64,000 nt of DNA, taken from Macrostomum lignano (Eukaryota). A model generated the notes under the pieces. The model worked only from the letters and a program-made list of their open reading frames with translations, made no database searches and was not told the DNA's origin. The DNA lies in assembly GCA_002269645.1 (NCBI GenBank), contig NIVC01000850.1, positions 62,001-126,000 of the forward strand. Reading direction: 5' to 3'. The stretch's first letter is position 1. Every line of letters starts with the position of its first letter. Both the position numbers and the translations under genes were made by a program. Of the stretch, positions 16,873 through 64,000 are shown in pieces.

Positions 16873-23378
<6,506 letters not shown>

Positions 23379-26654: not shown

Positions 26655-30725
<4,071 letters not shown>

Positions 30726-33377: not shown

Positions 33378-33925
<548 letters not shown>

Positions 33926-34291
33926 GGCAAATGCAGTCCCAGGCTCGCGGACAGACCAGTCCTTCGCCACTGTAACTGTGGCCTGTGAGATGAAGCGCAA
34001 GCAGCCCAGCCGCTCAGAGCAGACCGGAGTCAGCTCTAATCTCCCAGCAAATGGGAAGAGCAGCTGAGCCCGGGGACGTCACTCCGACGGGCCTCGGACA
34101 AAATCGATTCTTTTTAAAGTCTGCTTAGCGATTGGCCGAGTCTGCGGCTCCCTACTCCGGGCCTTCTCCCGCCACAGGCATCTCTCCAATTTTGGGGATA
34201 AATGCAGTCTTGATGCAGTTTTTGGCAAACGCGCTCTTAATTTAGATAAACGCAAATTTCTCCCAGGAAACTCAAGAAATCCCAGTTAGTT

Positions 34292-36369: not shown

Positions 36370-37290
36370 GACTATACATACTGTCCCATTGTCAGACTAT
36401 ACCGGTATAGATACTGTCCCATTGTCAGACTATACCGGTATAGATACTGTCCCATTGTCAGACTATACCGGTATAGATACTGTCCCATTGTCAGACTATA
36501 CCGGTATAGATACTGTCCCATTGTCAGACTATACCGGTATAGATACTGTCCCATTGTCAGACTATACCGGTATAGATACTGTCCCATTGTCAGACTATAC
36601 CGGTATAGATACTGTCCCATTGTCAGACTATACCGGTATAGATACTGTCCCATTGTCAGACTATACCGGTATAGATACTGTCCCATTGTCAGACTATACC
36701 GGTATAGATACTGTCCCATTGTCAGACTATACCGGTATATATACTGTCCCATTGTCAGACTATACCGGTATAGATACTGTCCCATTGTCAGACTATACCG
36801 GAATATATACTGTCCCATTGTCAGACTATACCGGTATAGATACTGTCCCATTGTCAGACTATACCGGTATAGATACTGTCCCATTGTCAGACTATACCGG
36901 TATAGATACTGTCCATTGTCAGACTATACCGGTATACATACTGTCCCATTGTCAGACTATACCGGTATAGATACTGTCCCATTGTCAGACTATACCGGAA
37001 TATATACTGTCCCATTGTCAGACTATACCGGTATACATACTGTCCCATTGTCAGACTATACCGGTATATATACTGTCCCATTGTCAGACTATACCGGTAT
37101 AGATACTGTCCCATTGTCAGACTATACCGGTATAGATACTGTCCCATTGTCAGACTATACCGGTATAGATACTGTCCCATTGTCAGACTATATATATATA
37201 CTGTCCCATTGTCAGACTACTGTCCCATTGTCAGACTATATATATACTGTCCCATTGTCAGACTATATATATACTGTCCCATTGTCAGAC
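36370..37290. repeat. 33-bp minisatellite directly after the GPCR stop
   Basis: Unit ACTGTCCCATTGTCAGACTATACCGGTATAGAT. Confidence 0.95.
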
Positions 37291-45843: not shown

Positions 45844-48800
45844 ATGAACTCGAATGGTTGTTTAGTATTGTGCTCGGTTATTTTACATGCAGCATCTTTG
45901 TTGGCGGCTGGAGCTGCAGCCGAGGTCACCAGCATCCCCGACAGCGGCGTCACTGGTGCGTTCGCTCTGGAATCGATGCACGACAACTTCACTTGTGTCC
46001 ACGGCTGCAGCTGCCAGCTGGTGGACTACACCAGGAGCCGCTACGCTGTCCTGTGCCAAGGACCTTCCATTAGGGCCATACCGGCCTTTCTAACCGAGGA
46101 TCTGCATCAGATTGAGAGCATGACTCTGCTGAGGACTAGCATCACAAAAATTGGTGAGAACAGTGAATAATAAGGCTGATTTGTTTTACTGCGACTCCTC
46201 TATTTTAATTATTCATTCATGCTGATAATGGCCTGGGTAATTCAAATAAACATCAATCATATTACCAAACTAGTTACAGTCTGGTGGCAAGAGCTGGAAT
46301 ATTGCTGTGATTGATGACCAGAAAAGTACTGTGACTGTGACTCATTACCAAATCGTTCATTTTTTACACTCATATTTTTGTCTGGAACGAAAGTTCGAAC
46401 ATGACTTGTACAAAACCGTGCGTTTGCGTTCACATGCACACTCGTGTAACTGCATTCACACACTCCTATAACTGCATTCACACACTCCTATAACTGCATT
46501 CACACACTCCTACAACTGCATTCACACACTCCAACACTGCATCCACACACTCCAACACTGCATTCACACACCCCTATAACTGCATTCACACACTCCAACA
46601 CTGCATTCACACACTCCTATAACTGCATTCACACACTCCTATAACTGCATTCACACACTCCTATAACTGCATTCACACACTCCTATAACTGCATTCACAC
46701 ACTCCAACACTGCATTCACACACTCCAACACTGCATTCACACACTCCTATAACTGCATTCACACACTCCTATAACTACATTCACACACTCCTATAACTGC
46801 ATTCACACACTCCTATAACTGCATTCACACACTCCTATAACTGCATTCACACACTCCTATAACTGCATTCACACACTCCAACACTGCATTCACACACTCC
46901 AACACTGCATTCACACACTCCAACACTGCATTCACACACTCCAACACTGCATTCACAAACTCCAACACTGCATTCACACACGCCGCAGATTCGCTCAGAA
47001 TGTTCAGCAACCTGATGTACCTCAACTTGAACCAGTCGCTGGTCCAAGCGCTGGACTCAGGCCTGGTAACAACATTCCCGGCAGTCGAGAGTCTCCACAT
47101 CGCCGGCAGTCGCCTAGCTCAACTGTCCGACTTCAACTTGATGCAGCATCCAGCTTTGAGAGACGTCGACTTTAGCGCCAACCAGCTGGACAGTTTTGTC
47201 AGCAAAGGATCCATGTCGTTAAGGACGCTTAAATTGAGCGGCAATCTGTTTACTCGGCTGGACAGTGTGGGAGCCAGCTATGTGGCTCTGAGGCTGCTCA
47301 ATGTCGCACAGAATCGACTGACGCTGAATGGCCTCATCGATTGGGACCCGCCGCCTGAGCTGGAGGTGAGTAGCTGTCTGAGATTGGAGTTGCAGTGGGT
47401 TGGGGGTCTTGGGCGGTGGATTAAGAAGCGTGTGTTTTTGGGTGGTGGGTTGAGGCCTGTGAATTGGGGTGGTGGGTTGAGGCCTGTGAATTGGGGTGGT
47501 GGGTTGAGGCCTGTGTTCTTGGGTGGTGGGTTGAGGCGCGTGTTTTGGGGTGGTGGGTTGAGGCCTGTGTTTTGTGGTGGGGGTTGAGGCGCGTGTTTTG
47601 GGGTGGTGGGTTGAGGCGCGTGTTTTGGGGTGGTGGGTTGAGGCGCGTTTTGGGGTGGTGGGTTGAGGCGCGTGTTTTGGGGTGGGGTTGAGGCGCGTGT
47701 TTTGGGTGGTGGGTTGAGGCGCGTGTTTTGGGTGGTGGGTTGAGGCGCGTGTTTTGGGGTGGTGGGTTGAGGCGCGTGTTTTGGGGTGGTGGGTTGAGGC
47801 GCGTGTTTTGGGGTGGTGGGTTGAGGCGCGTGTTTTGGGGTGGGGGTTGAGGCGCGTGTTTTGGGGTGGGGGTTGAGGCGCGTGTTTTGGGGTGGTTGGT
47901 TGAGGCCTTGTTTTTGGGTGGTGGGTTGAGGCCTATGAATTGGGGTGGTGGGTTGAGGCCTGTGAATTGGGGTGGTGGGTTGAGGCCTGTGTTTTTGGGT
48001 GGTGGGTTGAGGCCTGTGTTCTTGGGTGGTGGGTTGAGGCCTGTGTTTTTGGGTGGTGGGTTGAGGCCTGTGTTTTGTGGTGGTGGGTGTAGGCATGTGT
48101 TTTGTGGTGGTTGGTTGAGGCCAGTGTTTTTGGGTGGTGGGTTGAGGCCTGTGTTCTTGGGTGGTGGGTTGAGGCGCGTGTTTTGGGGTGGTTGGTTGAG
48201 GCCTGTGAATTGGGGTGGTGGGTTGAGGCCTGTGAATTGGGGTGGTGGGTTGAGGCCTGTGAATTGGGGTGGTGGGTTGAGGCCTGTGTTTTGGGGTGGT
48301 GGGTTGAGGCCTGTGTTCTTGGGTGGTGGGTTGAGGCCTGTGTTTTGGGGTGGTGGGTTGAGGCCTGTGTTCTTGGGTGGTGGGTTGAGGCGCGTGTTTT
48401 GGGGTGGTTGGTTGAGGCCTGTGTTTTTGGGTAGTGGGTTGAGGCCTGTGAAATGGGGTGGTGGTTTAGTACTCAGGCCTTTTGTTGTTTATGTTTATGT
48501 TTATTGCTTATGTTTATGTTTGTTTTATACGAGTACTCTTGTAAAGCACAAATGCACTCCTATGTTAGCTTCGAGGGGTTGATTAGTGTTTTGGATTAAT
48601 GGATTAAAATAAATATTCTCAGTTGAAGATATTAGAGTTTAGGTCGTTGTTTCTCAGGTTAAAAGATTAAGGTATTGATTTTTACGTTGTAGAGAGATCA
48701 GCTCCACTAGGGGATTAAATTCTTGACGTATTTTGCTTTCTAGATGGACACGAATTTGACCCAGTTAATCTCATTTTACAACCAACAGGTGCTCGACCTT

Positions 48801-50376
48801 AGCGGCAATCTGCTGGGCGTCGAGTCCGGGACCTTGCGGCGCAGCTCCAACGCCAGTTTCCTGGGCCGGTTGCGCCAACTGCAACAATTGGATCTGAGCG
48901 ACAACCGGCTGACTTCGCTCAAGGCCATCACCGATTGGCTGCCAGCGGACGCCCGGCTGTGGAAATTATCGCTGTCTAAGAACCCGTTTGTGTGCAGCTG
49001 CTCGCTGTACAGAGACAAGCAACGGCTGGCATGGTGGGGAACTGATCCATTATTTATCAATTGCGCTTTTAGTAGGCTAATTTTCTGAAATCAATCACAC
49101 ACGTAACTATACTGGCAAACCATTTTTAGTATATTGGACTAGGGGATGTAGCTTAGTGGTCAGAGCGTCAGACTCACGACTGAAAGGTCGGGGGTTCGAT
49201 TCCAGACCCGCATGGTAACAATTTGTTTCCTTTAGCCAGACACTTGAATCTGCATTGCTTCAGTTCACCCAGCTGTAAAATGAGTGCCAGCATTAGCTGG
49301 GGTAATTGAGGGTGTGTGTGGCGACCCCCTCCCAGTCCTTGTACTGAACAGCCGTACGCAGGCCTCAGATACGCCGCGCAATAGCCGCGGCTGAGCTGTA
49401 GGGGGCACATCTGTCCATTAGGGCCAGATGAAATCAATTATTATTATTTATTCAAATTTGTGCTGAAAACGAATTGCCTCAGCGCTGGCTGGTGGTGGGC
49501 CGATCTCGTCAAATACACCACTCGGCTGTCTCGATCCCGCAGGCAAGGCGTGGTCATCGCCGACACGCCAACCTGCCGTTTGAGCAACGGCAGCGACTGC
49601 CCACTGACGAGGCTGGGCAGCTGGGCTTGCGACGGCGACAACGGCGGCGGATCGTCGGTTACGAAAACCGGACCGACCCTGGCGCCGCGGGAGGATCTGG
49701 CATCGGCCTCTCTGTTGCTCCGCCTGCCAGCCGTGCTCGGTTGACCGCGGCAGCCGCCGCCGCACTCGCCATCCTGGCCGTTGGCGGCGGAGTCTGGGCC
49801 TGCCGACGTCGGCGTCATCAGCAACGCCGACAGAAGCAGCGGCAGCAGCAAGAGCTGGACTCCGAGTGTCCCTACAACACCGTGTCGGTGAAGTCAACCA
49901 ACCTGACAGGCAGCCAGCTGTCTGTGGCCACCTACCGGTCCGGGCTGCCGTATGCATTCGATCCGCAGCGATCGAGGGTGTTTTCCAAGAAACTGCATCC
50001 GCCTGCAGAGCCGGGGGTGCAACAGCAGCAGCAGCAACAGCAGCAGCTGCAGCTGCAGCAACAACTGCAACAACTTGGATCGCGCTGTCAATCGGAGCAA
50101 ATCCTGGGCAGAGGATCAACTCCGTTGCCGCCGATCCCAGACTCAATGACGGGTCAGCAACAGCCGAGACCGGAGGCCTACAGCTACATCGATATGGGCG
50201 GCAACAGCGTCAGCAACTCGTCAGCTTCCATAGACGCCAGCAATACAATGAATTACATGTACGACGAGGTGCAGCAGCGGCCAACAACAGCGCGAGGAGG
50301 TGACGTCAGGGACGGCGCAGTGCCAATCGAGGGATACGTGGACATGTGTTCGAATCACAGTGCAAACGTGGCTTAA
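45844..50376 (+). CDS. Single-pass leucine-rich-repeat transmembrane protein; exons 45844-46153, 46989-47365, 48789-~49006/49033, 49483-50376 (frame switch near 49650-49730)
   Basis: Signal peptide, LRRNT (C..GCSC...VLC), LRRs (LRDVDFSANQL, LRTLKLSGNLF, LQQLDLSDNRL), LRRCT (NPFVCSC...), TM AAAAALAILAVGGGVWAC followed by RRRR, and a tyrosine-motif tail. No TIR domain. Confidence 0.82.
46445..46980. repeat. 21/22-bp repeat in LRR intron 1
   Basis: Unit ACTGCATTCACACACTCC(TATA/AAC); ends ~8 nt before the acceptor. Confidence 0.95.
47430..48470. repeat. G-rich ~27-bp repeat in LRR intron 2
   Basis: Unit GGGTGGTGGGTTGAGGCCTGTGTTTTG and variants. Confidence 0.93.
49142..49452 (+). mobile_element. 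tRNA-derived SINE with CORE-like central domain and (ATT)n tail, in LRR-gene intron
   Basis: A box TAGCTTAGTGG and B box GGTTCGATTCC, but no pairing acceptor stem. Central CCTTTAGCCAGACACTT...CTTCAGTTCACCCAGCTGTAAAATGAG resembles the CORE-SINE consensus. Ends in ATTATTATTATT. Confidence 0.8.
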
Positions 50377-50469: not shown

Positions 50470-50985
50470 TTTCCAGAGTTTGAGGATCTGGGAGAATTAC
50501 AAACCGAATTTGAGGATCTGGAAGAATTATGCATCCAGTTTGAGGATCTGGGAGAATTATGAATCCAGTTTGAGGATCTGGGAGAATTATGAATCCAGTT
50601 TGAGGATCTGGGAGAATTATGAATCCAGTTTGAGGATCTGGGAGAATTACAAACCGAATTTAAGGATCCGGGAGAATTTTGAATCCAGTTTGAGGATCTG
50701 GGATAATTAAAACTGAGTTTAAGGATCTGGGATAATTAAGAACCGAGTTTAAGGATCTGGGAGAATTATTAATCCAGTTTGAGGATCTGGAAGAATTAAA
50801 GCCCGAGTTTGAGGATCCGGGAGAATTTTGAATCCAGTTTGAGGATCTGGGATAATTAAAACTGAGTTAAGGATCTGGGATAATTAAGAACCGAGTTTAA
50901 GGATCTGGGAGAATAACATGTAAGAACAAAGTTTGAGCATTTGGGAGAATTACAAACCGAGTTTGAAGATCTGGGAGATTTCAAA
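50470..50985. repeat. 30-bp repeat after the LRR stop codon
   Basis: Unit CAGTTTGAGGATCTGGGAGAATTATGAATC. Confidence 0.9.
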
Positions 50986-51764
50986 GGTCTAACAATCTAA
51001 ATTATTACTCACACACCACATTCCATACATGCCTTAAGTACCTGCTTAAATTGAAATAAAATATCAAAATATTTGACAGATAACTAATCTGCTGCATAAA
51101 AAATTAATGCACCCGCTGTAACAGTACGGGCGTAACCTATAATATGTTAGATATATCTGTAAATAGTTACCCAAAGAAGTTGAACTTTTAAATAAATTTG
51201 AAAATACAAACAATTTGTCAACTGAAGTCCAATTCAGCTACAATATTACAGACTTAAAGAAACTTCCAATTACTCGAAGATGTTGAATTTATTTGGAACT
51301 CAATCAATTTTTTTGCCGCAATATGCTACCACACAAAAACCATAACTGTGAAAATTCGCTCATAAATTTTAGAGACGCATGAAAAAAATAAGTCACGCTT
51401 GCACGCGATACTACTTGACGCAGTGGAATAGAGAGTAAGCATCAACTCGAATTTCAGACATTAAAAAGAAAAATCCAATCACCAAAAAGTGCAAATTAAA
51501 GCAAAAATATAACGCTTTATTAAATCATGCGGGAAAAACGCGCGCATTACTACTAACCAAGGCCTTACAGTAGCGAGTAGGTAAAGTTGCGAAACAGCAT
51601 ATGATAACGCCTTACGAGCATGAAAATGCGCAATAAATTAATTGAAGCTATTATTATGCGCAGGTAGGCCCGAAATCAGAAGAATTAGAAAAAGCAATCA
51701 AAAGTAGTGACGCAACAATAATTTATTGAAATCAAATATAAAGCCGCCCATACAGTGATTTAAA

Positions 51765-52235
51765 CATCCGATATGTATCGAAAAGCACACAAACTGATAA
51801 ATTCACAATCACCCGATATGTATCGAAAAGCACACAAACTGATAAATTCACACTCACCCGATATGTATCGAAAAGCACACAAACTGATAAATTCACACTC
51901 ACCCGATATGTATCGAAAAGCACACAAACTGATAAATTCACACTCACCCGATATGTATCGAAAAGCACACAAACTGATAAATTCACACTCACCCGATATG
52001 TATCGAAAAGCACACAAACTGATAAATTCACAATCACCCGATATGTATCGAAAAGCACACAAACTGATAAATTCACACTCACCCGATATGTATCGAAAAG
52101 CACACAAACTGATAAATTCACACTCACCCGATATGTATCGAAAAGCACACAAACTGATAAATTCACACTCACCCGATATGTATCGAAAAATAGGAAAACA
52201 CAAAAGGAGTCCCATATCCCGATATGTATCGAAAA
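51765..52235. repeat. 45-bp minisatellite 3' of the TARBP1 stop
   Basis: Unit CCGATATGTATCGAAAAGCACACAAACTGATAAATTCACACTCAC. Confidence 0.95.
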
Positions 52236-52277
52236 ACACAAAACTTGACAGCAAAAAAATCAATCCGACCAGCAGCG

Positions 52278-55200
52278 CTACAGATCAGGCGAAGCGGCGG
52301 CGGTACAATCCTCCAGCAGCAGACGCTGTCTTCGATATTCCCACAGCGCCAGAGCGGCCGACACGTGCACATTCAGCGATCGAACTACGCCGGACATTGG
52401 AATCTCCAGACAGGCGTCCAGCTCGCCAATCAAATCCGGCGGAATGCCGCGCTTCTCGTGGCCAAGCAGCAGGAGGCAGCGCCGGGTAGCGGGGAACTGG
52501 AAGCGGTGCATCGGCCGGGAGCGCTCGGTCTGCTCCAGGCCGATCAGGGCGACGCCTTCGGCTCGCTGACGCCGCAGAAAGTCGAGCAACGGCTGGCCGG
52601 GCGGCACCTCGGCGAGGCGGAGCCAGCGGTGGGCGCCAAGCGACAGCTGGTCGAACTCCGGATCGGCTAGAAGTCGAAGGCTCGGCAGGCAGACGTCGGA
52701 GATGCCGAACGATTCGGCAGAGCGGCAGAGGCCGCCCAGATTGTTGGCCTTGTCGATTAGGGAGGCCACAATGATGAGGCCGCCGGCGGCGGAAGCTGCG
52801 CCGACTGCAGTTGCAGGCTGGCTGAAGAAGTGAGAAAGAGAGCATTTGCCGATATGTATCGAATTGAATACAACTTAACAGCATATCATTAACAATTCTT
52901 AGAAGCGCCTTCCGATATGTATCGAAGTGAATATAACTTAACAGCATATCATTAGCAATTCTTAGAAACGCCTTCCGATATGTATCGAATTGAATACAAC
53001 TTAACAGCATATCATTAGCAATTCTTAGTAACGCCTTCCGATATGTATCGAATTGAATATAACTTAACAGCATATCATTAACAATTCTTAGAAACGCCTA
53101 CCGATATGTATCGAAGTGAATATAGCTAAAGCAGAGAGGAGAGAACATTAATAAAAGCACAAAAATCGTAGTAAAGCGTGCCGATATGTATCGAAAATAA
53201 CATTAGAAAAAGTGCACTTACGAGCACTGTTGAGCCGATTGAGGTTTCCGTTGCAAACTACTTAAAGTAGGTTCGTTAACAGCCGACTCCTGCTGCTGCT
53301 CAACTACAGACGAGGCGGCGTTTAACACAGCCGATTCCAGAGCTTCGGCCGCTTGCCATCGATTTGGTAGCAACAGCTGACGCTCCAACGGTTCAATAGA
53401 GGCAGCGGAGTTCACTGTCACCACTGGCTGTTGAGCACTGCATCCGGTAGGCGTGGAGGCGATCGACCACTGATCTGGCAGGATCAGCTCCTCGGCCTGA
53501 AGGCCCCACAGCGCGGGAGCCAGTCGGCAGACCGAATCGAGGCTCAGGTGGCCCCTAGGCAGGAAGTCGCTCAGCCACCAGTGCCGTTCAAGCAGGCCGA
53601 GCTTGCGGAATGCGTGCCGAGAACGGCGGAGAAAATCCGACCGCTGCGCTAAGCGACTTTCCACCGCGGCGTCTGGTGGTTTTTTATTAGGGAAATGAGA
53701 GTGGGATAGTCTCACCCTCACTGTAGGATAATCTCACCCTCCCTGTAGGATAATCTCCCACTCAATGTACGATAATCTCTCCCTCACTGTAGGATAATCT
53801 TCCCCTCACTGTACGATAATCTCCCCTCACTGTAGGATATTCTTAACCTCATTTCAGGATAATCTCCCCCTCACTGTGGGATAATCTCCCACTCACTGTA
53901 GGATAACCCCCCTCACTGTAGGATAATCTCCCACTCACTGTAGGATAATCTCACCCTCACTGTAGGATAATCTCACCCTCACTGTAGGATAATCTCTCCC
54001 TCACTGTAGGATAATCTCCCCCTCACTGTACGATAATCTCCCACTCACTGTAGGATAATCTTCTATCACTGTAGGATAATCTCCCACTCACTGTAGGATA
54101 ATCTCACCCTCACTGTAGGATAATCTCACCCTCACTGTAGGATAATCTTCCATCACTGTAGGATAATCTCCCACTCACTGTAGGATAATCTTCCCCTCAC
54201 TGTACGATAATCTCCCCCTCACTGTAGAATAATCTCCCACTCACTGTAGGAAAATCTCTCCCTCACTGTAGGATATTCTTAACCTCATTTCAGGATAGTC
54301 TCACCCTCACTGTGAGATAATTTCACCCTCACTGTAGGATAATCTCCCCCTCACTGTAGGATAATCTTCCCCTCACTGTAGGATAATCTCCACCTCCCTG
54401 TAGGATAATCTTCCCCTCTCTGTAGGATATTCTTAACCTCATTTCAGGATAATCTCACCCTCACTGTGAGATAATTTCACCCTCACTGTAGGATAATCTC
54501 CCCCTCCCTGTAGGATAATCTCACCCTCCCTGTAGGATAATCTCTCTCACTGTAGGATAATCTCCCCCTCACTGTAGGATAATCTCACCCTCCCTGTAGG
54601 ATAATCTCTCTCTCACTGTAGGATAATCTCCCCCTCACTGTACGATAATCTCCCACTCACTGTAGGATAATCTTCCATCACTGTAGGATAATCTCCCACA
54701 CTTTGTAGGATAATCTTCCCCTCTCTGTACGATAATCTCCCCCTCACTGTAGAATAATCTCCCACTCACTGTAGGAAAATCTCTCCCTCACTGTAGGATA
54801 TTCTTAACCTCATTTCAGGATAATCTCACCCTCACTGTGAGATAATTTCACCCTCACTGTAGGATAATCTCCCCCTCACTGTAGGATAATCTCCCCCTCA
54901 CTGTACGATAATCTCCCCTCACTGTAGGATATTCTTAACCTCATTTCAGGATAATCTCACCCTCACTGTAGTAATCTATTACTACGCTGGTAGAATACAG
55001 TGACCAATAAAATATGATCATCTGTTTAGGATGATAAAGAACACAATCTCATCAAAGAAGATTTTTTCGCAAAATCAACAACCGACTCACCTTTCAATCG
55101 GGCAGCACTGGCGGCCATGGAGCTCAACCGCAGTTCGGCAATTTGAGCATGCAATCGAATTTGCAACTGCTGAGCCAGGCACCAGTCTGCTGCCAGAGTC

Positions 55201-57550
55201 AGCACCCGGGTCACGTGATCGCTCAGTCGGCTGTCCGAATCTGCCAGCAGCTGATTGGCCACGAGAATCGATACGGATAACAGGCACGTGACGAATGCTG
55301 GCCGGCTGTCCGTGGAGAATTTCGACTGCGGATTGGAGATGGGGGAATTGTTGACTGTGTAGCTGATGGGGAATTGTTGACTGTGTAGCTGATGGGGGAA
55401 TTGTTGACTGTGTAGCTGATGGGGAATTGTTGACTGTGTAGCTGATGGGGAATTGTTGACTGTGTAGCTGATGGGGGAATTGTTGACTGTGTAGCTGATG
55501 GGGAATTGTTGACTGTGTAGCTGATGGGGAATTGTTGACTGTGTAGCTGATGGGGAATTGTTGACTGTGTAGCTGATGGGGAATTGTTGACTGTGTAGCT
55601 GATGGGGGAATTGTTGACTGTGTAGCTGATGGGGAATTGTTGACTGTGTAGCTGATGGGGGAATTGTTGACTGTGTAGCTGATGGGGAATTGTTCACTGT
55701 GTAGCTGATGGGGAATTGTTCATTGTGTAGCTGATGGGGAATTGTTCATTGTGTAGCTGATGGGGAATTGTTCACTGTGTAGCTGATGGGGAATTGTTCA
55801 CTGTGTAGCTGATGGGGAATTGTTCACTGTGTAGCTGATGGGGAATTGTTCACTGTGTAGCTGATGGGGAATTGTTCATTGTGTAGCTGATGGGGAATTG
55901 TTCACTGTGTAGCTGATGGGGAATTGTTCACTGTGTAGCTGATGGGGAATTGTTCATTGTGTAGCTGATGGGGAATTGTTCACTGTGTAGCTGATGGGGG
56001 AATTGTTGACTGTGTAGCTGATGGGGGAATTGTTGACTGTGTAGCTGATGGGGGAATTGTTCACTGTGTAGCTGATGGGGGAATTGTTGACTGTGTAGCT
56101 GATGGGGAATTGTTCACTGTGTAGCTGATGGGGAATTGTTCACTGTGTAGCTGATGGGGAATTGTTCACTGTGTAGCTGATGGGGAATTGTTCATTGTGT
56201 AGCTGATGGGGAATTGTTCACTGTGTAGCTGATGGGGGAATTGTTGACTGTGTAGCTGATGGGGGAATTGTTGACTGTGTAGCTGATGGGGGAATTGTTC
56301 ACTGTGTAGCTGATGGGGGAATTGTTCACTGTGTAGCTGATGGGGAATTGTTTACTGTGTAGCTGATGGGGGAATTGTTCACTGTGTAGCTGATGGGGAA
56401 TTGTTCACTGTGTAGCTGATGGGGAATTGTTCACTGTGTGGCTGATGGGGGAATTGTTGACTGTGTAGCTGATGGGGAATTGTTCACTGTGTAGCTAATG
56501 GGGGAATTGTTAATTGTGTAGCTGATGGGGAATTGTTCACTGTGTAGCTGATGGGGAATTGTTCACTGTGTGGCTGATGAGGTATTCAATATCTGGCTGA
56601 TAGGGGAATTCAATATCTAGCTGATAGCGGAATTCGATATTTAGCTGATGGGTGGAATTTAATATCTATCTGATAGCGGAATTAAATATCTAGCTGATAG
56701 GGGAATTCAATATCTAGCTGATAGGGGAATTCAATATCTAGCTGATAGGGGAATTCAATCCCTAGCTCATAGGGGAATTCAATATTTAGCTGATAGGGGA
56801 ATTCAATATTTAGCTGATGGGGGAATTCAATATCTATCTGGTAGGGGAATTAAATATCTAGCTGATAGGGGAATTCCATATCTAGCTGATAGGGGAATTC
56901 AATATCTAGCTGATAGGGGAATTCAATATCTAGCTGATAGGGGAATTCAATCCCTAGCTGATAGGGGAATTCAATATCTAGCTGATAGGGGAATTCAATA
57001 TTTAGCTGATGGGGGAATTCAATATCTAGCTGATAGGGGAATTCAATATCTAGCTGATAGGGGAATTCAATCCCTAGCTGATAGGGGGATTCAATATCTA
57101 GCTGATAGGGGAATTCAATATCTAGCTGATAGGGGAATTCAATCCCTAGCTGATAGGGGGATTCAATATCTAGCTGATAGGGGAATTCAATATCTAGCTG
57201 ATAGGGGAATTCAATCCCTAGCTGATAAGGGAATTCAATGCCTAGCTGATAGGGGAATTCAATATTTAGCTGATGGGGGAATTCAATATCTAGCTGATAG
57301 GGGAATTCAATATCTAGCTGATAGGGGAATTCAATCCCTAGCTGATAGGGGAATTCAACGCCTAGCTGATAGGGGAATTCAACGCCTAGCTGATAGGGGA
57401 ATTCAAGAATCAGTTTTCAGCGTTTTAAATCTAAAAACTGATATTAGTACAAAAAACGCGCATTTACTACTATAAATAAGTAGTAGATTACTAGAAAATG
57501 ATCTAATAAGAGTGAATTACTGCACTAAGTGAGCCGTCTCAGCACTGTTT

Positions 57551-62599: not shown

Positions 62600-64000
62600 A
62601 ATGCATTTCGACCACAATCTCGTCAACTGCAAACTCAAATGCAAGGCTTCAAGACTTTCCTGAGAGCCCGCCTCGGACTAATCTCGTATGCAGCTCTCTG
62701 GCAACTGGTCACTAAGAAAGCCAGAGAGAAGCTGCGTGCGGATGAACTGAGAATATACAAGAAACTCAAGAACCTATGGACCGAGCAAAAATCATCCCAA
62801 GAAATAAAGGCCGTCACCAATCTATTTAAGCATGAGCTTTCGGTTCCCGAACTGAACTGCTTGCAACACTGCTTGCAACATAGCGAAATCCTATACTTCC
62901 AAGAAGAATTAACAAATTTCAAATCGCGGCCGAGATTGAATCTGGGATTAGTAAGTGCCTTCGAGCTAAAATTGCTTTGAGTGGAGAGTTGCCAGATAGT
63001 TTTAGGATTTGTCTCATTGCTGAATTCGATAAGTTCATCTGCCGGGCTCGTGGGTATGTTGGTGCTAGACGTAATAGACTGGTCCATCAGACTCTGGAAA
63101 AGCTTAAGAAAAATAAAGAAATTAAGATTGTTAGCTACGACAAAGGCCATGGTGTTGCCATCATGGATAGCTCTGACTACTTAGGCAAACTTGACGAAAT
63201 TGTGCAGGACAAACTCAAATTTCATTGCCTTGGTGAGGCCAATGAGGTCACTATGATGCACCCCGTGCTTAAAAATGAGATCTTTACAAACTTTTCTTAG
63301 AACCTATGTGAAGTCGCACATTTGCCCTGATACTTTTCAACGGATTACTCTTTGTGGGAGCCAACCTGGCTAGCTGTATGGGCTGTGCAAAGTTCACAAA
63401 AGTGGCTACCCCCTCAGACCCATTGTGTCCATTTTCGACAATGAGGCAAAAAAGGAAGAGTTCTTTAATACCATCAATGCTACCCATAAGAACATCAGGT
63501 TTACTTCTAAGGGTGGTGCTAAAAGACTTCCCTTTCTGCACATTGACGTTGATACGAGTAAAGGTTTGATTCAAACTAGCGTGTTTAGAAAAGCTAGCTT
63601 CACTGGTCTCATGCTTAGGTTCGATGCCCTCTGCCCTAGGCAATGGAAAGACGGTTTGGTATGGTGTTTTCTGCAAAGAGCTTTTTTGATTTGCAGTTCC
63701 TGGAAGCTTTTTCATGAGGAGCTGGAACAGCTTACTCGGCTGTTCATGATGAATGGATACCCTCGTGACCATATTTCCGGCATAATTAATAGGTTTCTCT
63801 GCAAGAAGTTTTCTGGTCAAAATCATACTCAGAAGAATGATCTCAATGATGATCGTAGTCCCGTCATTGTGGTTCCTTATTTAGGCCTCTGCTCCATGGA
63901 GTTTGGGAAGAAAGTAGAAAAATTATTTAGAAGTCACATTGATTCCCAGCTCCAGGTTTTGTTCCGTACGGAAAAGATTGCTCAGTTTGTCTGCAGGTTG
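62600..64000 (+). mobile_element. Penelope-like retroelement remnant (RT pseudogene, runs off window)
   Basis: LKKNKEIKIVSYDKGHGVAIMDSSDY, QPG*LYGLCKVHKSGYPLRPIVS, INATHKNIRFT...LPFLHI...TSVFRK and ELEQL...NGYP are hallmark PLE RT/thumb motifs. Has a stop at 63370, a frameshift near 63290, and no YxDD core. Confidence 0.9.

What the first reader, a model, noticed from the sequence alone, without database searches (positions are those of the whole stretch)
51765..53200. TARBP1 last exon bracketed on both sides by different arrays sharing one palindromic core
Seen: the 45-bp array 3' of the stop (51765-52235) and the 63-bp array in the last intron (52845-53200) are otherwise unrelated. Both start each unit with CCGATATGTATCGA, which contains the hairpin CGATA-TG-TATCG, in the same orientation. 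A 14-mer shared across a 550-nt coding exon is hard to explain by chance. Inference: a common seed was copied across the exon (local hopping or template switching), or the exon lies within an older repeat or element; it could also be a protein-binding site.
Basis: partly seen in the sequence, partly recalled or inferred. Interest (0 to 1): 0.75.

Follow-up and report, generated by a model that had tools for sequence, protein, structure and literature searches.

The report
Two related minisatellites flanking an exon
Two tandem-repeat arrays on either side of the last coding exon of a TARBP1 RNA-methyltransferase gene share a never-varying 15-base core, most likely because both grew from one short sequence that was copied locally; this is a fairly ordinary product of a very repeat-rich genome region, apart from the unexplained perfect conservation of the core.

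Summary
CCGATATGTATCGA occurs 17 times, all exact and all on the + strand: 11 copies in a 45-bp array (51768-52232) and 6 in a 63-bp array (52849-53194). It occurs nowhere else in the 64 kb, even with 3 mismatches allowed. The gene is on the minus strand. Its last exon (52821-52278) encodes the whole SpoU domain of a TARBP1 orthologue. The 63-bp array fills 346 of the 400 nt of the last intron, and the 45-bp array lies in the probable 3'UTR.

The arrays are not wholly unrelated. Their old edge copies keep in-register similarity beyond the core (14/21; empirical p about 3e-4 to 1e-3). The context is a window that is 39% minisatellite, where neighbouring arrays often share words (4/38 near pairs against 1/592 far pairs) and a second putative exon is bracketed in the same way.

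Best reading: one seed of at least 35 nt was duplicated locally across the exon, and each copy then expanded on its own by slippage or unequal exchange. The 'hairpin' is weak (-1.7 kcal/mol). No transposon ends were found.

Two things stay open: why the core is invariant while adjacent bases diverged, and why the same 14-mer sits in arrays on two unrelated eukaryote-like public contigs. Interest is modest.

The parts
51768..52172 (+). Nine homogeneous 45-bp units, each CCGATATGTATCGAAAA + 28 nt. The variant pattern A C C C C A C C C indicates a recent duplication of a 5-unit block.
52173..52218 (+). V45: a divergent 46-nt edge unit with a perfect core and a tail not significantly like the 45-bp unit.
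   Evidence: p=0.13
52219..52268 (+). T45: the terminal, seed-like copy. It has a perfect core, and its tail AAAACACAAAACTTGACAGCA resembles both the 45-bp unit and the intron's 63-bp unit. It is closed by CCGA at 52265-52268, exactly +46 from its core start.
52278..52821 (-). Last coding exon of the TARBP1 orthologue. It holds the whole SpoU/TrmH methyltransferase domain and the stop TAG at 52280-52278.
52822..53221 (-). Last intron, 400 nt, GTAAGT...TTCTTCAG, phase 2. Core-bounded repeat occupies 346 nt of it. Its position is not shared with sea-star TARBP1.
52849..53100 (+). Four 63-bp units, each CCGATATGTATCGAA + 48 nt, 94% alike.
53101..53180 (+). V63: a divergent 80-nt edge unit, clearly derived from the 63-bp unit with an insertion.
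   Evidence: p=3e-4; D4
53181..53221 (+). T63: the terminal copy, a perfect core with the 3'UTR-type extension (CCGATATGTATCGAAAA) plus 24 nt (27 nt after the 14-mer) running to the donor site. The tail is weakly like the 45-bp unit and ends CACTTAC (GTAAGTG on the gene strand).
   Evidence: p about 0.01
53222..53721 (-). Upstream TARBP1 exon. The ORF is open and joins the last exon in frame.
51722..51727 (-). First canonical AATAAA after the stop on the gene strand, about 40 nt beyond the 45-bp array. The array is therefore probably inside the 3'UTR.
51592..51656 (+). Possible degenerate relic of a 63-type unit (AACAGCATATGAT / AACGCCTTACGA...) beyond the 45-bp array. Suggestive only.
   Evidence: D5, D6; rank 2-28 of 3140 tiles, depending on gap costs

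Best explanation
These are two young minisatellites that descend from one short ancestral sequence: the 15-nt core CCGATATGTATCGAA plus at least about 20 further bases. That sequence came to lie in the same orientation on both sides of the last coding exon of a TARBP1 orthologue, once in the last intron and once in the 3'UTR. The likeliest route is a short local duplication, meaning a templated copy over roughly 0.6-1 kb during replication or break repair. This step is inferred.

Each copy then expanded independently by replication slippage or unequal exchange. One became a 45-bp array (nine near-identical units plus two older edge copies). The other became a 63-bp array (four units plus two older edge copies) that now fills almost the whole intron. 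Homogenisation keeps the inner units alike, and the edge copies preserve the older state that still links the two arrays.

The exon itself is not part of the repeat. The core stays invariant either because it is the register in which misalignment and conversion occur, or because something binds it. That last point is unresolved.
For: - Shown: 17 exact, co-oriented cores confined to 1.43 kb of a 64-kb window, with none elsewhere even at 3 mismatches or fewer.
- The 15-mer is the longest word shared among 630 array pairs.
- In-register similarity beyond the core: T45 against U63 matches 14/21 positions (empirical p 3e-4; 1.4e-3 with an A-rich null). By gapped alignment, V63~U63 p=3e-4, U45~T63 p about 0.01, T45~U63 p about 0.02, and U45~T45 p about 0.03.
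- The 45-bp cluster starts at CCGA (the core) and is closed by CCGA exactly one 46-nt unit after its last core. This is the short-direct-repeat signature of the Haber-Louis model of minisatellite birth, as summarised in PMC6947457.
- A 5-unit block duplication inside the 45-bp array shows that unequal exchange is ongoing.
- Local processes dominate here. The window is 38.7% arrays. Array pairs less than 1.5 kb apart share a word of 10 nt or more in 4/38 cases, against 1/592 for distant pairs (Fisher 5e-5). A second putative exon (about 20821-21077) is bracketed by related AATCTCAC arrays.
- No transposon ends or shared flanks were found.
Against: - The extra-core similarities are short and individually modest (p about 1e-3 to 3e-2), and several comparisons were possible.
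- The two consensus units do not align outside the core (p=0.66).
- The copying event itself is not observed, and no sister species or population data were available.
- The same 14-mer occurs in tandem arrays of two other eukaryote-like contigs, so independent seeding from a dispersed motif or family is possible.
- Neutral decay does not explain why all mismatches in the edge copies fall outside the core (P=0.036, 0.007, 0.002).
- The window alone gives only a weak bound on background density: fewer than about 1 array per 21 kb.
Confidence: 0.6

Rival explanations
1. The two arrays were seeded independently by a dispersed repeat family or small mobile element that carries the core (a GTAYCGRTAY-type palindromic motif). 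They are two separate insertions, one in the intron and one in the 3'UTR, and each later expanded.
For: - The exact 14-mer sits in a 52-bp array on metagenome contig L002.
- It also forms the consensus of 10/20-bp motif arrays filling an intron on L003, a eukaryotic contig mis-binned in a Dysgonomonas MAG, with 6 exact and 30 near copies.
- L002 and L003 share a 19-mer with each other, so a real family exists.
- TE-derived tandem repeats are common (PMC6947457; PMC3389668, listed).
Against: - The window shares nothing beyond the 14-15-mer with L002 or L003, so that link could be chance.
- No terminal inverted repeats, target-site duplications or conserved flanks surround either array.
- There are no other copies, exact or degenerate, in the remaining 62.6 kb.
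- The T45~U63 tail similarity is not expected from a 14-nt motif alone.
- Independent insertions would share an orientation only half the time.
Confidence: 0.2
2. The core is a functional binding site, for example for a dimeric or BED-finger-type DNA-binding protein or for an RNA-binding factor acting on the pre-mRNA and 3'UTR. On this view the arrays are kept or recruited because they multiply that site. It can also be combined with the best explanation, as the reason for the core's invariance.
For: - The core is perfectly conserved in all 17 copies while adjacent bases diverged, and there are no degenerate copies at all.
- Both CpGs are intact although CpG o/e is 0.70 in low-GC DNA.
- Each core carries two inverted CGATA half-sites: 18 CGATA and 17 TATCG in 1.43 kb.
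- The motif recurs in arrays of other contigs, where it forms the DRE octamer TATCGATA. That DREF binds DRE comes from the abstract of PMC2475616 (listed).
Against: - The window's core does not contain TATCGATA (0 occurrences).
- The arrays lie in an intron and a 3'UTR, not at a promoter.
- No binding data exist and the organism is unknown.
- Array homogenisation, or a recent origin of all copies, could also give identical cores.
- BEAF-32 is, to my knowledge, confined to drosophilids.
Confidence: 0.1
3. The last intron is a lineage-specific intron built from the repeat, in the manner of an introner or of intron creation by repeat expansion. A piece of the 3'UTR-type repeat carrying GTRAGTG was inserted into the coding sequence and supplied the donor site.
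For: - The repeat occupies 346 of 400 nt and reaches to within 26-27 nt of both splice sites.
- The annotated sea-star TARBP1 exon spans this position without an intron.
- The intron's first 41 nt (T63) carry the 3'UTR-type 17-mer. Their tail aligns weakly with the 45-bp unit, whose end is GTGAGTG on the gene strand.
- Precedents: introner elements that extend nearly to the donor and acceptor (PMC3488318), and repeat expansion creating introns in Cryptococcus (PMC2395259).
Against: - There is only one, very distant outgroup, and intron loss in that lineage is equally possible.
- Other introns in this window are filled by unrelated arrays. The simpler view is that arrays expand inside pre-existing short introns and are stopped by the splice signals.
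- No direct repeat flanks the intron.
- The T63~U45 similarity is weak (p about 0.01 gapped; 10/26 ungapped).
Confidence: 0.08
4. The match is pure chance: two unrelated arrays happen to share a 14-15-mer.
For: There are effectively only two independent unit sequences, and the window holds many arrays (630 pairs compared).
Against: - The next-longest word shared by non-neighbouring arrays is a 12-nt low-complexity C-rich word; most pairs share 3-6 nt.
- By my own arithmetic, a 15-mer shared by units of 45 and 63 nt has probability of about 1e-5 per pair.
- On top of that come the in-register tail similarity, the same orientation and the adjacency.
Confidence: 0.01

Closest known systems
Minisatellite families that share a core (human hypervariable minisatellites, Jeffreys et al. 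1985; cited from my own knowledge)
   Same: Arrays with different unit lengths carry the same 10-15-bp core in the same orientation in every unit. In that case the core was proposed to promote the recombination that builds arrays.
   Different: - The core here is an AT-rich quasi-palindrome with two CpGs, not a G-rich chi-like motif.
- Only two arrays are seen, and they are neighbours.
- Their edge copies share sequence beyond the core, which points to descent by local duplication and not to a genome-wide recombination signal.
Haber-Louis model of minisatellite birth (slippage or unequal exchange between 5-10-bp direct repeats flanking a seed; summarised in PMC6947457)
   Same: The 45-bp cluster begins with CCGA and is closed by CCGA exactly one unit (46 nt) after its last core. 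Later growth by block duplication is visible.
   Different: The direct repeat is only 4 nt. No matching repeat closes the 63-bp array at +63 or +80. The model explains how each array was born, not why two arrays share a seed.
Tandem repeats derived from transposable elements (MITE, Helitron or Helentron internal arrays, e.g. DINE-TR1; PMC6947457, PMC3389668)
   Same: Related arrays turn up at separate sites in introns and UTRs. The motif recurs in arrays of other contigs (L002, L003).
   Different: No terminal inverted repeats, terminal hairpin, target-site duplication or conserved flanks were found. There is no flank homology with L002 or L003.
Introner elements and intron creation by repeat expansion or tandem arrays (PMC3488318; PMC2395259; Zhuo et al. 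2007, known to me only from the reference list of PMC3488318)
   Same: The repeat extends nearly to the donor and acceptor. The intron position is not shared with the one outgroup. The repeat units carry splice-site-like motifs (GGTGAGT, TTTATCAG).
   Different: Neighbouring introns contain unrelated arrays, so there is no single introner family in view. The age of the intron is unknown.
DRE (TATCGATA, the DREF site) and clustered CGATA motifs bound by BEAF-32 in Drosophila (DRE/DREF from PMC2475616, abstract listed; BEAF-32 from my own knowledge)
   Same: Each core has two inverted CGATA half-sites. The L002 and L003 arrays contain perfect TATCGATA.
   Different: The window's core lacks TATCGATA. 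The arrays are not at a promoter or a domain boundary. The organism is unknown and binding is untested.

Membership tests
Minisatellite | Head-to-tail copies of a 10-100-bp unit | tested here: met
   TRF: period 45, 9.4 copies, 99% matches; period 63, 4.4 copies, 94%. Core spacing is 45/46 and 63/80.
Minisatellite | Origin signature: the array is bounded by a short direct repeat (Haber-Louis) | tested here: inconclusive
   Met for the 45-bp cluster: CCGA at 51769 and at 52265, the latter +46 from the last core start. Not met for the 63-bp cluster: CCGAT only at +54, inside the upstream exon.
Core-sharing minisatellite family (Jeffreys type) | The same core in arrays with different unit lengths | tested here: met
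   A 15-mer is shared by the 45-bp and 63-bp units and is the top of 630 array pairs. The same 14-mer occurs in a 52-bp array (L002) and in 10/20-bp arrays (L003).
Core-sharing minisatellite family (Jeffreys type) | Many dispersed loci in one genome carry the core | not testable with these tools
   The source genome is not available. There are no other copies in the 64 kb. It is unknown whether L002 and L003 belong to the same or a related species.
Transposon-derived tandem repeat (MITE / Helitron / Helentron) | Terminal inverted repeats or a terminal hairpin, plus target-site duplication, flanking the array | tested here: not met
   Only chance-level inverted repeats in 51000-53900. The left flanks show no homology to each other or to the units. 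The direct-repeat scan gives no shared flanks.
Transposon-derived tandem repeat (MITE / Helitron / Helentron) | Other copies with homologous non-array flanks | tested here: not met
   None in the window. L002 and L003 match only the 14-15-nt core. A genome-wide test was not possible.
Introner / intron made from a repeat | The repeat extends almost to both splice sites | tested here: met
   The core-bounded repeat at 52849-53194 covers 346 of 400 nt, with 26-27 nt left at each end.
Introner / intron made from a repeat | The intron is absent at the orthologous position in relatives | tested here: inconclusive
   The sea-star annotated exon (L001 9349-9546, aa 72-137) spans the site. This is a single, very distant outgroup, and no closer loci could be obtained.
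Introner / intron made from a repeat | The same element fills many introns of unrelated genes | tested here: not met
   Other introns in the window hold unrelated arrays. A genome-wide test was not possible.
DRE / DREF site | The octamer TATCGATA | tested here: not met
   0 occurrences in the window. The core reads TATCGAA.
BEAF-32-type CGATA cluster | Clustered CGATA motifs in both orientations | tested here: met
   18 CGATA and 17 TATCG within 51760-53200, against 27 and 24 in the other roughly 62.6 kb.
BEAF-32-type CGATA cluster | The organism encodes the factor and the site is bound | not testable with these tools
   The organism is unknown and there are no binding data.
TARBP1 (eukaryotic TrmH/SpoU 2'-O-methyltransferase), the flanked gene | C-terminal SpoU_methylase domain, closest to TARBP1 and not to bacterial TrmH | tested here: met
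   Pfam PF00588 at 6.2e-28. PDB 2HA8 (human TARBP1 domain) at 4.6e-49, against 2.9e-14 for the best TrmH. The best database hit is Acanthaster TARBP1 at 53% identity.

The most novel reading that the evidence does not exclude
The 14-15-nt quasi-palindrome could be a sequence-specific nucleation site for minisatellites. On this reading it is recognised by a protein (a nuclease, a transposase-derived factor or a BED-type factor) or is intrinsically prone to misalignment. It would seed arrays of different unit length at many loci and in more than one species (window 45 and 63 bp; L002 52 bp; L003 10/20 bp), stay invariant while everything around it drifts, and be able to build or inflate introns (the TARBP1 intron here, the array-filled intron on L003).
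Probability: 0.12. Interest if true: 0.7.

Novelty: new member of a known kind. Interest (0 to 1): 0.33.

Why it matters
If the best reading is right, this is a clean small example of how minisatellites are born and spread. A seed is copied a few hundred bases away, across a conserved exon, and then expands into arrays of different period. The array edges still record the history. It also shows that an intron can come to consist almost entirely of one young array.

It matters more if the invariance of the core has a cause beyond recent origin. A motif that is protected, or that directs its own amplification, and that recurs in arrays in other genomes, would be a concrete handle on the old question of whether minisatellite 'cores' are functional. 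For annotation, there is a practical point: the 3'UTR array carries seven consensus 5' splice-site heptamers that could confuse gene prediction or produce cryptic splicing.

Tried and rejected
- Tandem duplication of [intron + last exon] followed by loss of one exon copy: no DNA-level or translated relic of the exon in 50980-51767 or elsewhere.
- A stable hairpin or cruciform as the key feature: the single core folds at -1.7 kcal/mol (4-bp stem), and core-to-core pairing is not better than in shuffles (z -1.4 and -0.8).
- Transposon ends: the inverted and direct repeat scans give only chance-level pairs. The left flanks of both arrays are unrelated to the units (p=0.37, 0.85, 0.62).
- Homology of V63's polypyrimidine insert to the intron's real 3' end: shuffle p=0.04, but 14 of 175 Py-rich ...AG sites elsewhere score as well, so rejected.
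- The 'AAAAGCACA' block of V63 as a 45-type unit: p=0.95.
- A known RNA family: none in the window at Rfam gathering scores.
- Closer orthologous loci or organism identity: the protein database holds only a 53% sea-star hit. Of the two further contigs fetched, one is alga-like at 71% GC, and the other never reached the script folder and went unread.
- Confirming that the L003 MAG comes from the millipede-gut study PMC10823672: the name was not found in the text or the held supplements, so this remains a recollection and not a result.
- The motif in the literature: no paper holds the 14-mer. GTATCGATAC hits are primers and DRE oligos.
- Shared repeats between L003 and the window: none.
- Calibrating the chance rate of the collection hits: not possible because the scans are capped. 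Viral contigs gave 0 hits.
Full report
**What is there.** The region contains two tandem arrays. One has a 45-bp period (TRF 51768-52189, 9.4 copies, 99% matches). The other has a 63-bp period (52849-53124, 4.4 copies, 94%). The 14-mer CCGATATGTATCGA occurs 17 times, always exact and always on the + strand. Eleven copies run from 51768 to 52219 and six from 52849 to 53181, where shuffles predict 0.01. Allowing up to three mismatches adds not a single further site anywhere in the 64 kb, although chance predicts 3.4. The shared word is in fact 15 nt (…CGAA). It is the longest word shared by any of the 630 pairs of arrays in the window.

Each cluster consists of homogeneous units followed, on its right-hand side, by two divergent copies:

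| Label | Coordinates | Description |
|---|---|---|
| U45 | 51768-52172 | nine homogeneous 45-bp units |
| V45 | 52173-52218 | divergent 46-nt edge unit |
| T45 | 52219 onward | terminal copy of the 45-bp cluster |
| U63 | 52849-53100 | four 63-bp units |
| V63 | 53101-53180 | divergent 80-nt edge unit |
| T63 | 53181-53221 | terminal copy, running to the intron's donor site |

**Gene context.** The gene lies on the minus strand. The ORF ending at TAG 52280-52278 encodes a SpoU_methylase domain (Pfam 6.2e-28). It matches the human TARBP1 methyltransferase domain (PDB 2HA8) at 4.6e-49, against 2.9e-14 for the best bacterial TrmH. The best database hit is sea-star TARBP1 at 53% identity.

- The exon begins at 52821, after TTCTTCAG. 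The upstream exon ends at 53222, before GTAAGT. The 400-nt intron is phase 2, and the two frames join.
- The 63-bp cluster occupies 346 of the 400 intron bases.
- The 45-bp cluster starts 45 nt after the stop. The first canonical AATAAA on the gene strand (51727-51722) lies about 40 nt beyond the cluster's far end, so the array is probably all 3'UTR.

**Are the arrays otherwise unrelated?** At the level of the consensus units, yes: the tails do not align (p=0.66). The edge copies tell a different story.

- T45 reads core-AAAACACAAAACTTGACAGCA and the intron unit reads core-ATTGAATACAACTTAACAGCA. They match at 14 of 21 positions in the same register, including 11 of 12 in AACTTRACAGCA.
- Against all 21-mers of the window's own AT-rich non-array DNA, that gives p=3e-4, or 1.4e-3 against A-rich 21-mers only. 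It remains near 1% after allowing for the roughly nine possible cross-array comparisons.
- By gapped alignment with shuffles: V63~U63 p=3e-4, U45~T45 p about 0.03, and U45~T63 p about 0.01. The last alignment runs to the intron's donor site.
- T63 also carries the 3'UTR-type 17-mer CCGATATGTATCGAAAA.
- A possible degenerate 63-type unit lies beyond the 45-bp array at 51592-51656. Its rank among window tiles varies from 2nd to 28th of 3140 with gap costs, so I treat it only as a lead.

**The background.** The window is extraordinary. Forty-three strong arrays cover 38.7% of it, mostly inside introns of genes with GC-rich exons. Relatedness between arrays here is a local property. Pairs less than 1.5 kb apart share a word of 10 nt or more in 4 of 38 cases, against 1 of 592 for distant pairs (Fisher 5e-5).

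One of those cases is a second bracketed exon. A 257-nt open, GC3-rich segment (about 20821-21077, + strand), flanked by AG and GT, has AATCTCAC-type 15-bp arrays in both neighbouring introns, in the same orientation. Abutting 26-bp and 24-bp arrays in another TARBP1 intron share GCTGAT and GGGGAATT. So arrays that resemble their neighbours, even across an exon, are a recurrent feature here. It is not peculiar to TARBP1.

**How it most likely arose.** I conclude that one seed of at least 35 nt was copied locally across the exon and that each copy then expanded on its own.

- *Expansion is directly visible.* The 45-bp array shows the variant pattern A C C C C A C C C, a recent duplication of a 5-unit block. 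The cluster begins with CCGA and is closed by CCGA at 52265-52268, exactly one 46-nt unit after its last core. That is the short-direct-repeat signature of the Haber-Louis model, as summarised in PMC6947457.
- *The copying step is inferred.* It rests on the shared orientation, the tail similarity, the absence of the motif from the other 62.6 kb, and the absence of transposon hallmarks. There are no terminal inverted repeats, no target-site duplications and no shared flanks.
- *A larger duplication is unlikely.* Duplication of [intron + exon] with later loss of one exon copy is not supported, because no exon relic exists downstream.

**What the palindrome does.** As a structure, little. The core folds as a 4-bp stem with a 4-nt loop at -1.7 kcal/mol, and pairing between neighbouring cores is no better than in shuffled sequence.

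As a sequence, however, it is special. In the edge copies every mismatch falls outside the 15-mer (P=0.036, 0.007 and 0.002 in three partly dependent comparisons). No degenerate copy exists. Both CpGs are intact in all copies, although CpG is mildly depleted in low-GC DNA (o/e 0.70). The possible causes are that the core is the register for misalignment and short-tract conversion, that all copies are very young, or that something binds it. I cannot separate these here.

**The motif elsewhere.** I scanned public collections for two cores 25-55 nt apart. Each large collection gave one hit, and viral contigs gave none.

- L002 is a 2.9-kb AT-rich metagenome contig. It has a 52-bp array (3.5 copies) with the exact 14-mer in each unit, and a second GTATCG cluster downstream.
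- L003 is filed under a Dysgonomonas MAG but is plainly eukaryotic. A GC-rich coding exon ends in GTACAG|gtaaga, and the intron that follows is packed with arrays of a 10-bp motif, GTAYCGRTAY, inside higher-order units of 116-136 bp. It holds 6 exact and 30 near copies of the 14-mer. There the 14-mer is the junction of two 10-mers (GTA-CCGATAT-GTATCGA-TAC).
- L002 and L003 share a 19-mer with each other, so they belong to one family. With the window they share only the 14-15 nt that I searched for. I could not calibrate how often a random 14-mer would hit some array in collections of this size.

I regard a real relationship as somewhat more likely than not, because both hits are in the rare eukaryotic fraction of these collections, but it is not shown. 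The L002 and L003 arrays contain the Drosophila DRE octamer TATCGATA; the window's core does not.

**The intron.** In the sea star, the annotated TARBP1 exon (L001 9349-9546, aa 72-137) runs uninterrupted from 49 residues upstream of LILVASLIDK. The intron here sits about 17 residues upstream of that motif. Conversely, the sea star has three introns inside the SpoU domain that this gene lacks. So the array-filled intron is not at a position shared with the only outgroup I could obtain.

Two further observations keep an 'intron built from the repeat' reading alive. T63 weakly resembles the 45-bp unit, whose end is GTGAGTG on the gene strand. And seven of the nine homogeneous 3'UTR units carry GGTGAGT. 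There are precedents: introners (PMC3488318) and repeat expansion creating introns in Cryptococcus (PMC2395259).

The simpler view is that arrays in this genome expand inside existing short introns until the splice signals stop them. Neighbouring introns hold unrelated arrays, which favours that view.

**Verdict.** The 'copied seed' interpretation is the best supported. The 'older element' interpretation is not supported, and the 'binding site' interpretation remains open. This is a new example of a known kind of thing: related minisatellites born from a local seed, in a region unusually rich in them. The residual puzzles are the all-or-none invariance of the core and its recurrence in arrays of other contigs. 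I score interest at about 0.33.

Noticed in passing
window 1-64000: 38.7% of the window is strong tandem arrays (43 arrays). They include roughly 500-bp tetranucleotide tracts (AGAC 22517-23060, CTAA 23956-24683, TATC 27881-28404, AGAT 29867-30338, CAGA 33380-33926) and many 12-55-bp minisatellites, mostly within introns of genes with GC-rich exons.
   Followed up: partly
window 20346-22001: A second putative coding exon (about 20821-21077, + strand; open frame, GC3 0.75) is bracketed by related AATCTCAC(CC) 15-bp arrays in both flanking introns, in the same orientation.
   Followed up: partly
window 55342-57406: Abutting 26-bp and 24-bp arrays in an upstream TARBP1 intron share GCTGAT and GGGGAATT. 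This is another pair of neighbouring arrays with a common core.
   Followed up: no
window 51768-52172 (minus strand): Seven of the nine homogeneous 45-bp units carry the 5' splice-site consensus GGTGAGT and all nine carry TTTATCAG on the gene strand, inside the probable 3'UTR. These are potential cryptic splice sites and a trap for gene prediction.
   Followed up: partly
L003 1-2659 (JAVBJR010001262.1, 'MAG: Dysgonomonas sp. GLO_MAG_00070'): This contig of a bacterial MAG is eukaryotic DNA: a spliced GC-rich exon at about 660-1010, an intron full of GTAYCGRTAY arrays, and a MITE-like inverted repeat in 1-600. It is probably host contamination of the bin.
   Followed up: partly
window 52278-52821 vs L001 9349-16199: This TARBP1 has the whole SpoU domain in one exon, whereas the sea-star gene splits it with three introns. 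That is consistent with intron loss at the 3' end in this lineage.
   Followed up: partly
window 48744-50376 (+): The neighbouring gene encodes an LRR/LRRCT protein with a poly-Q tract and is convergent with TARBP1. Its downstream flank (stop near 50376; not shown to be 3'UTR) carries its own 30-bp array at 50476-50978.
   Followed up: no
window 36373-37219: The 33-bp array unit contains TATACCGGTATAGATAC, which loosely resembles the GTACCGGTAT/GTATCGATAC motif of L003. This may well be coincidence.
   Followed up: no
window 62635-63300: Overlapping ORFs on both strands resemble a degenerate retroelement-type ORF (…KGHGVAIMDSSDYLGKLDEIV…), but there is no Pfam hit.
   Followed up: no
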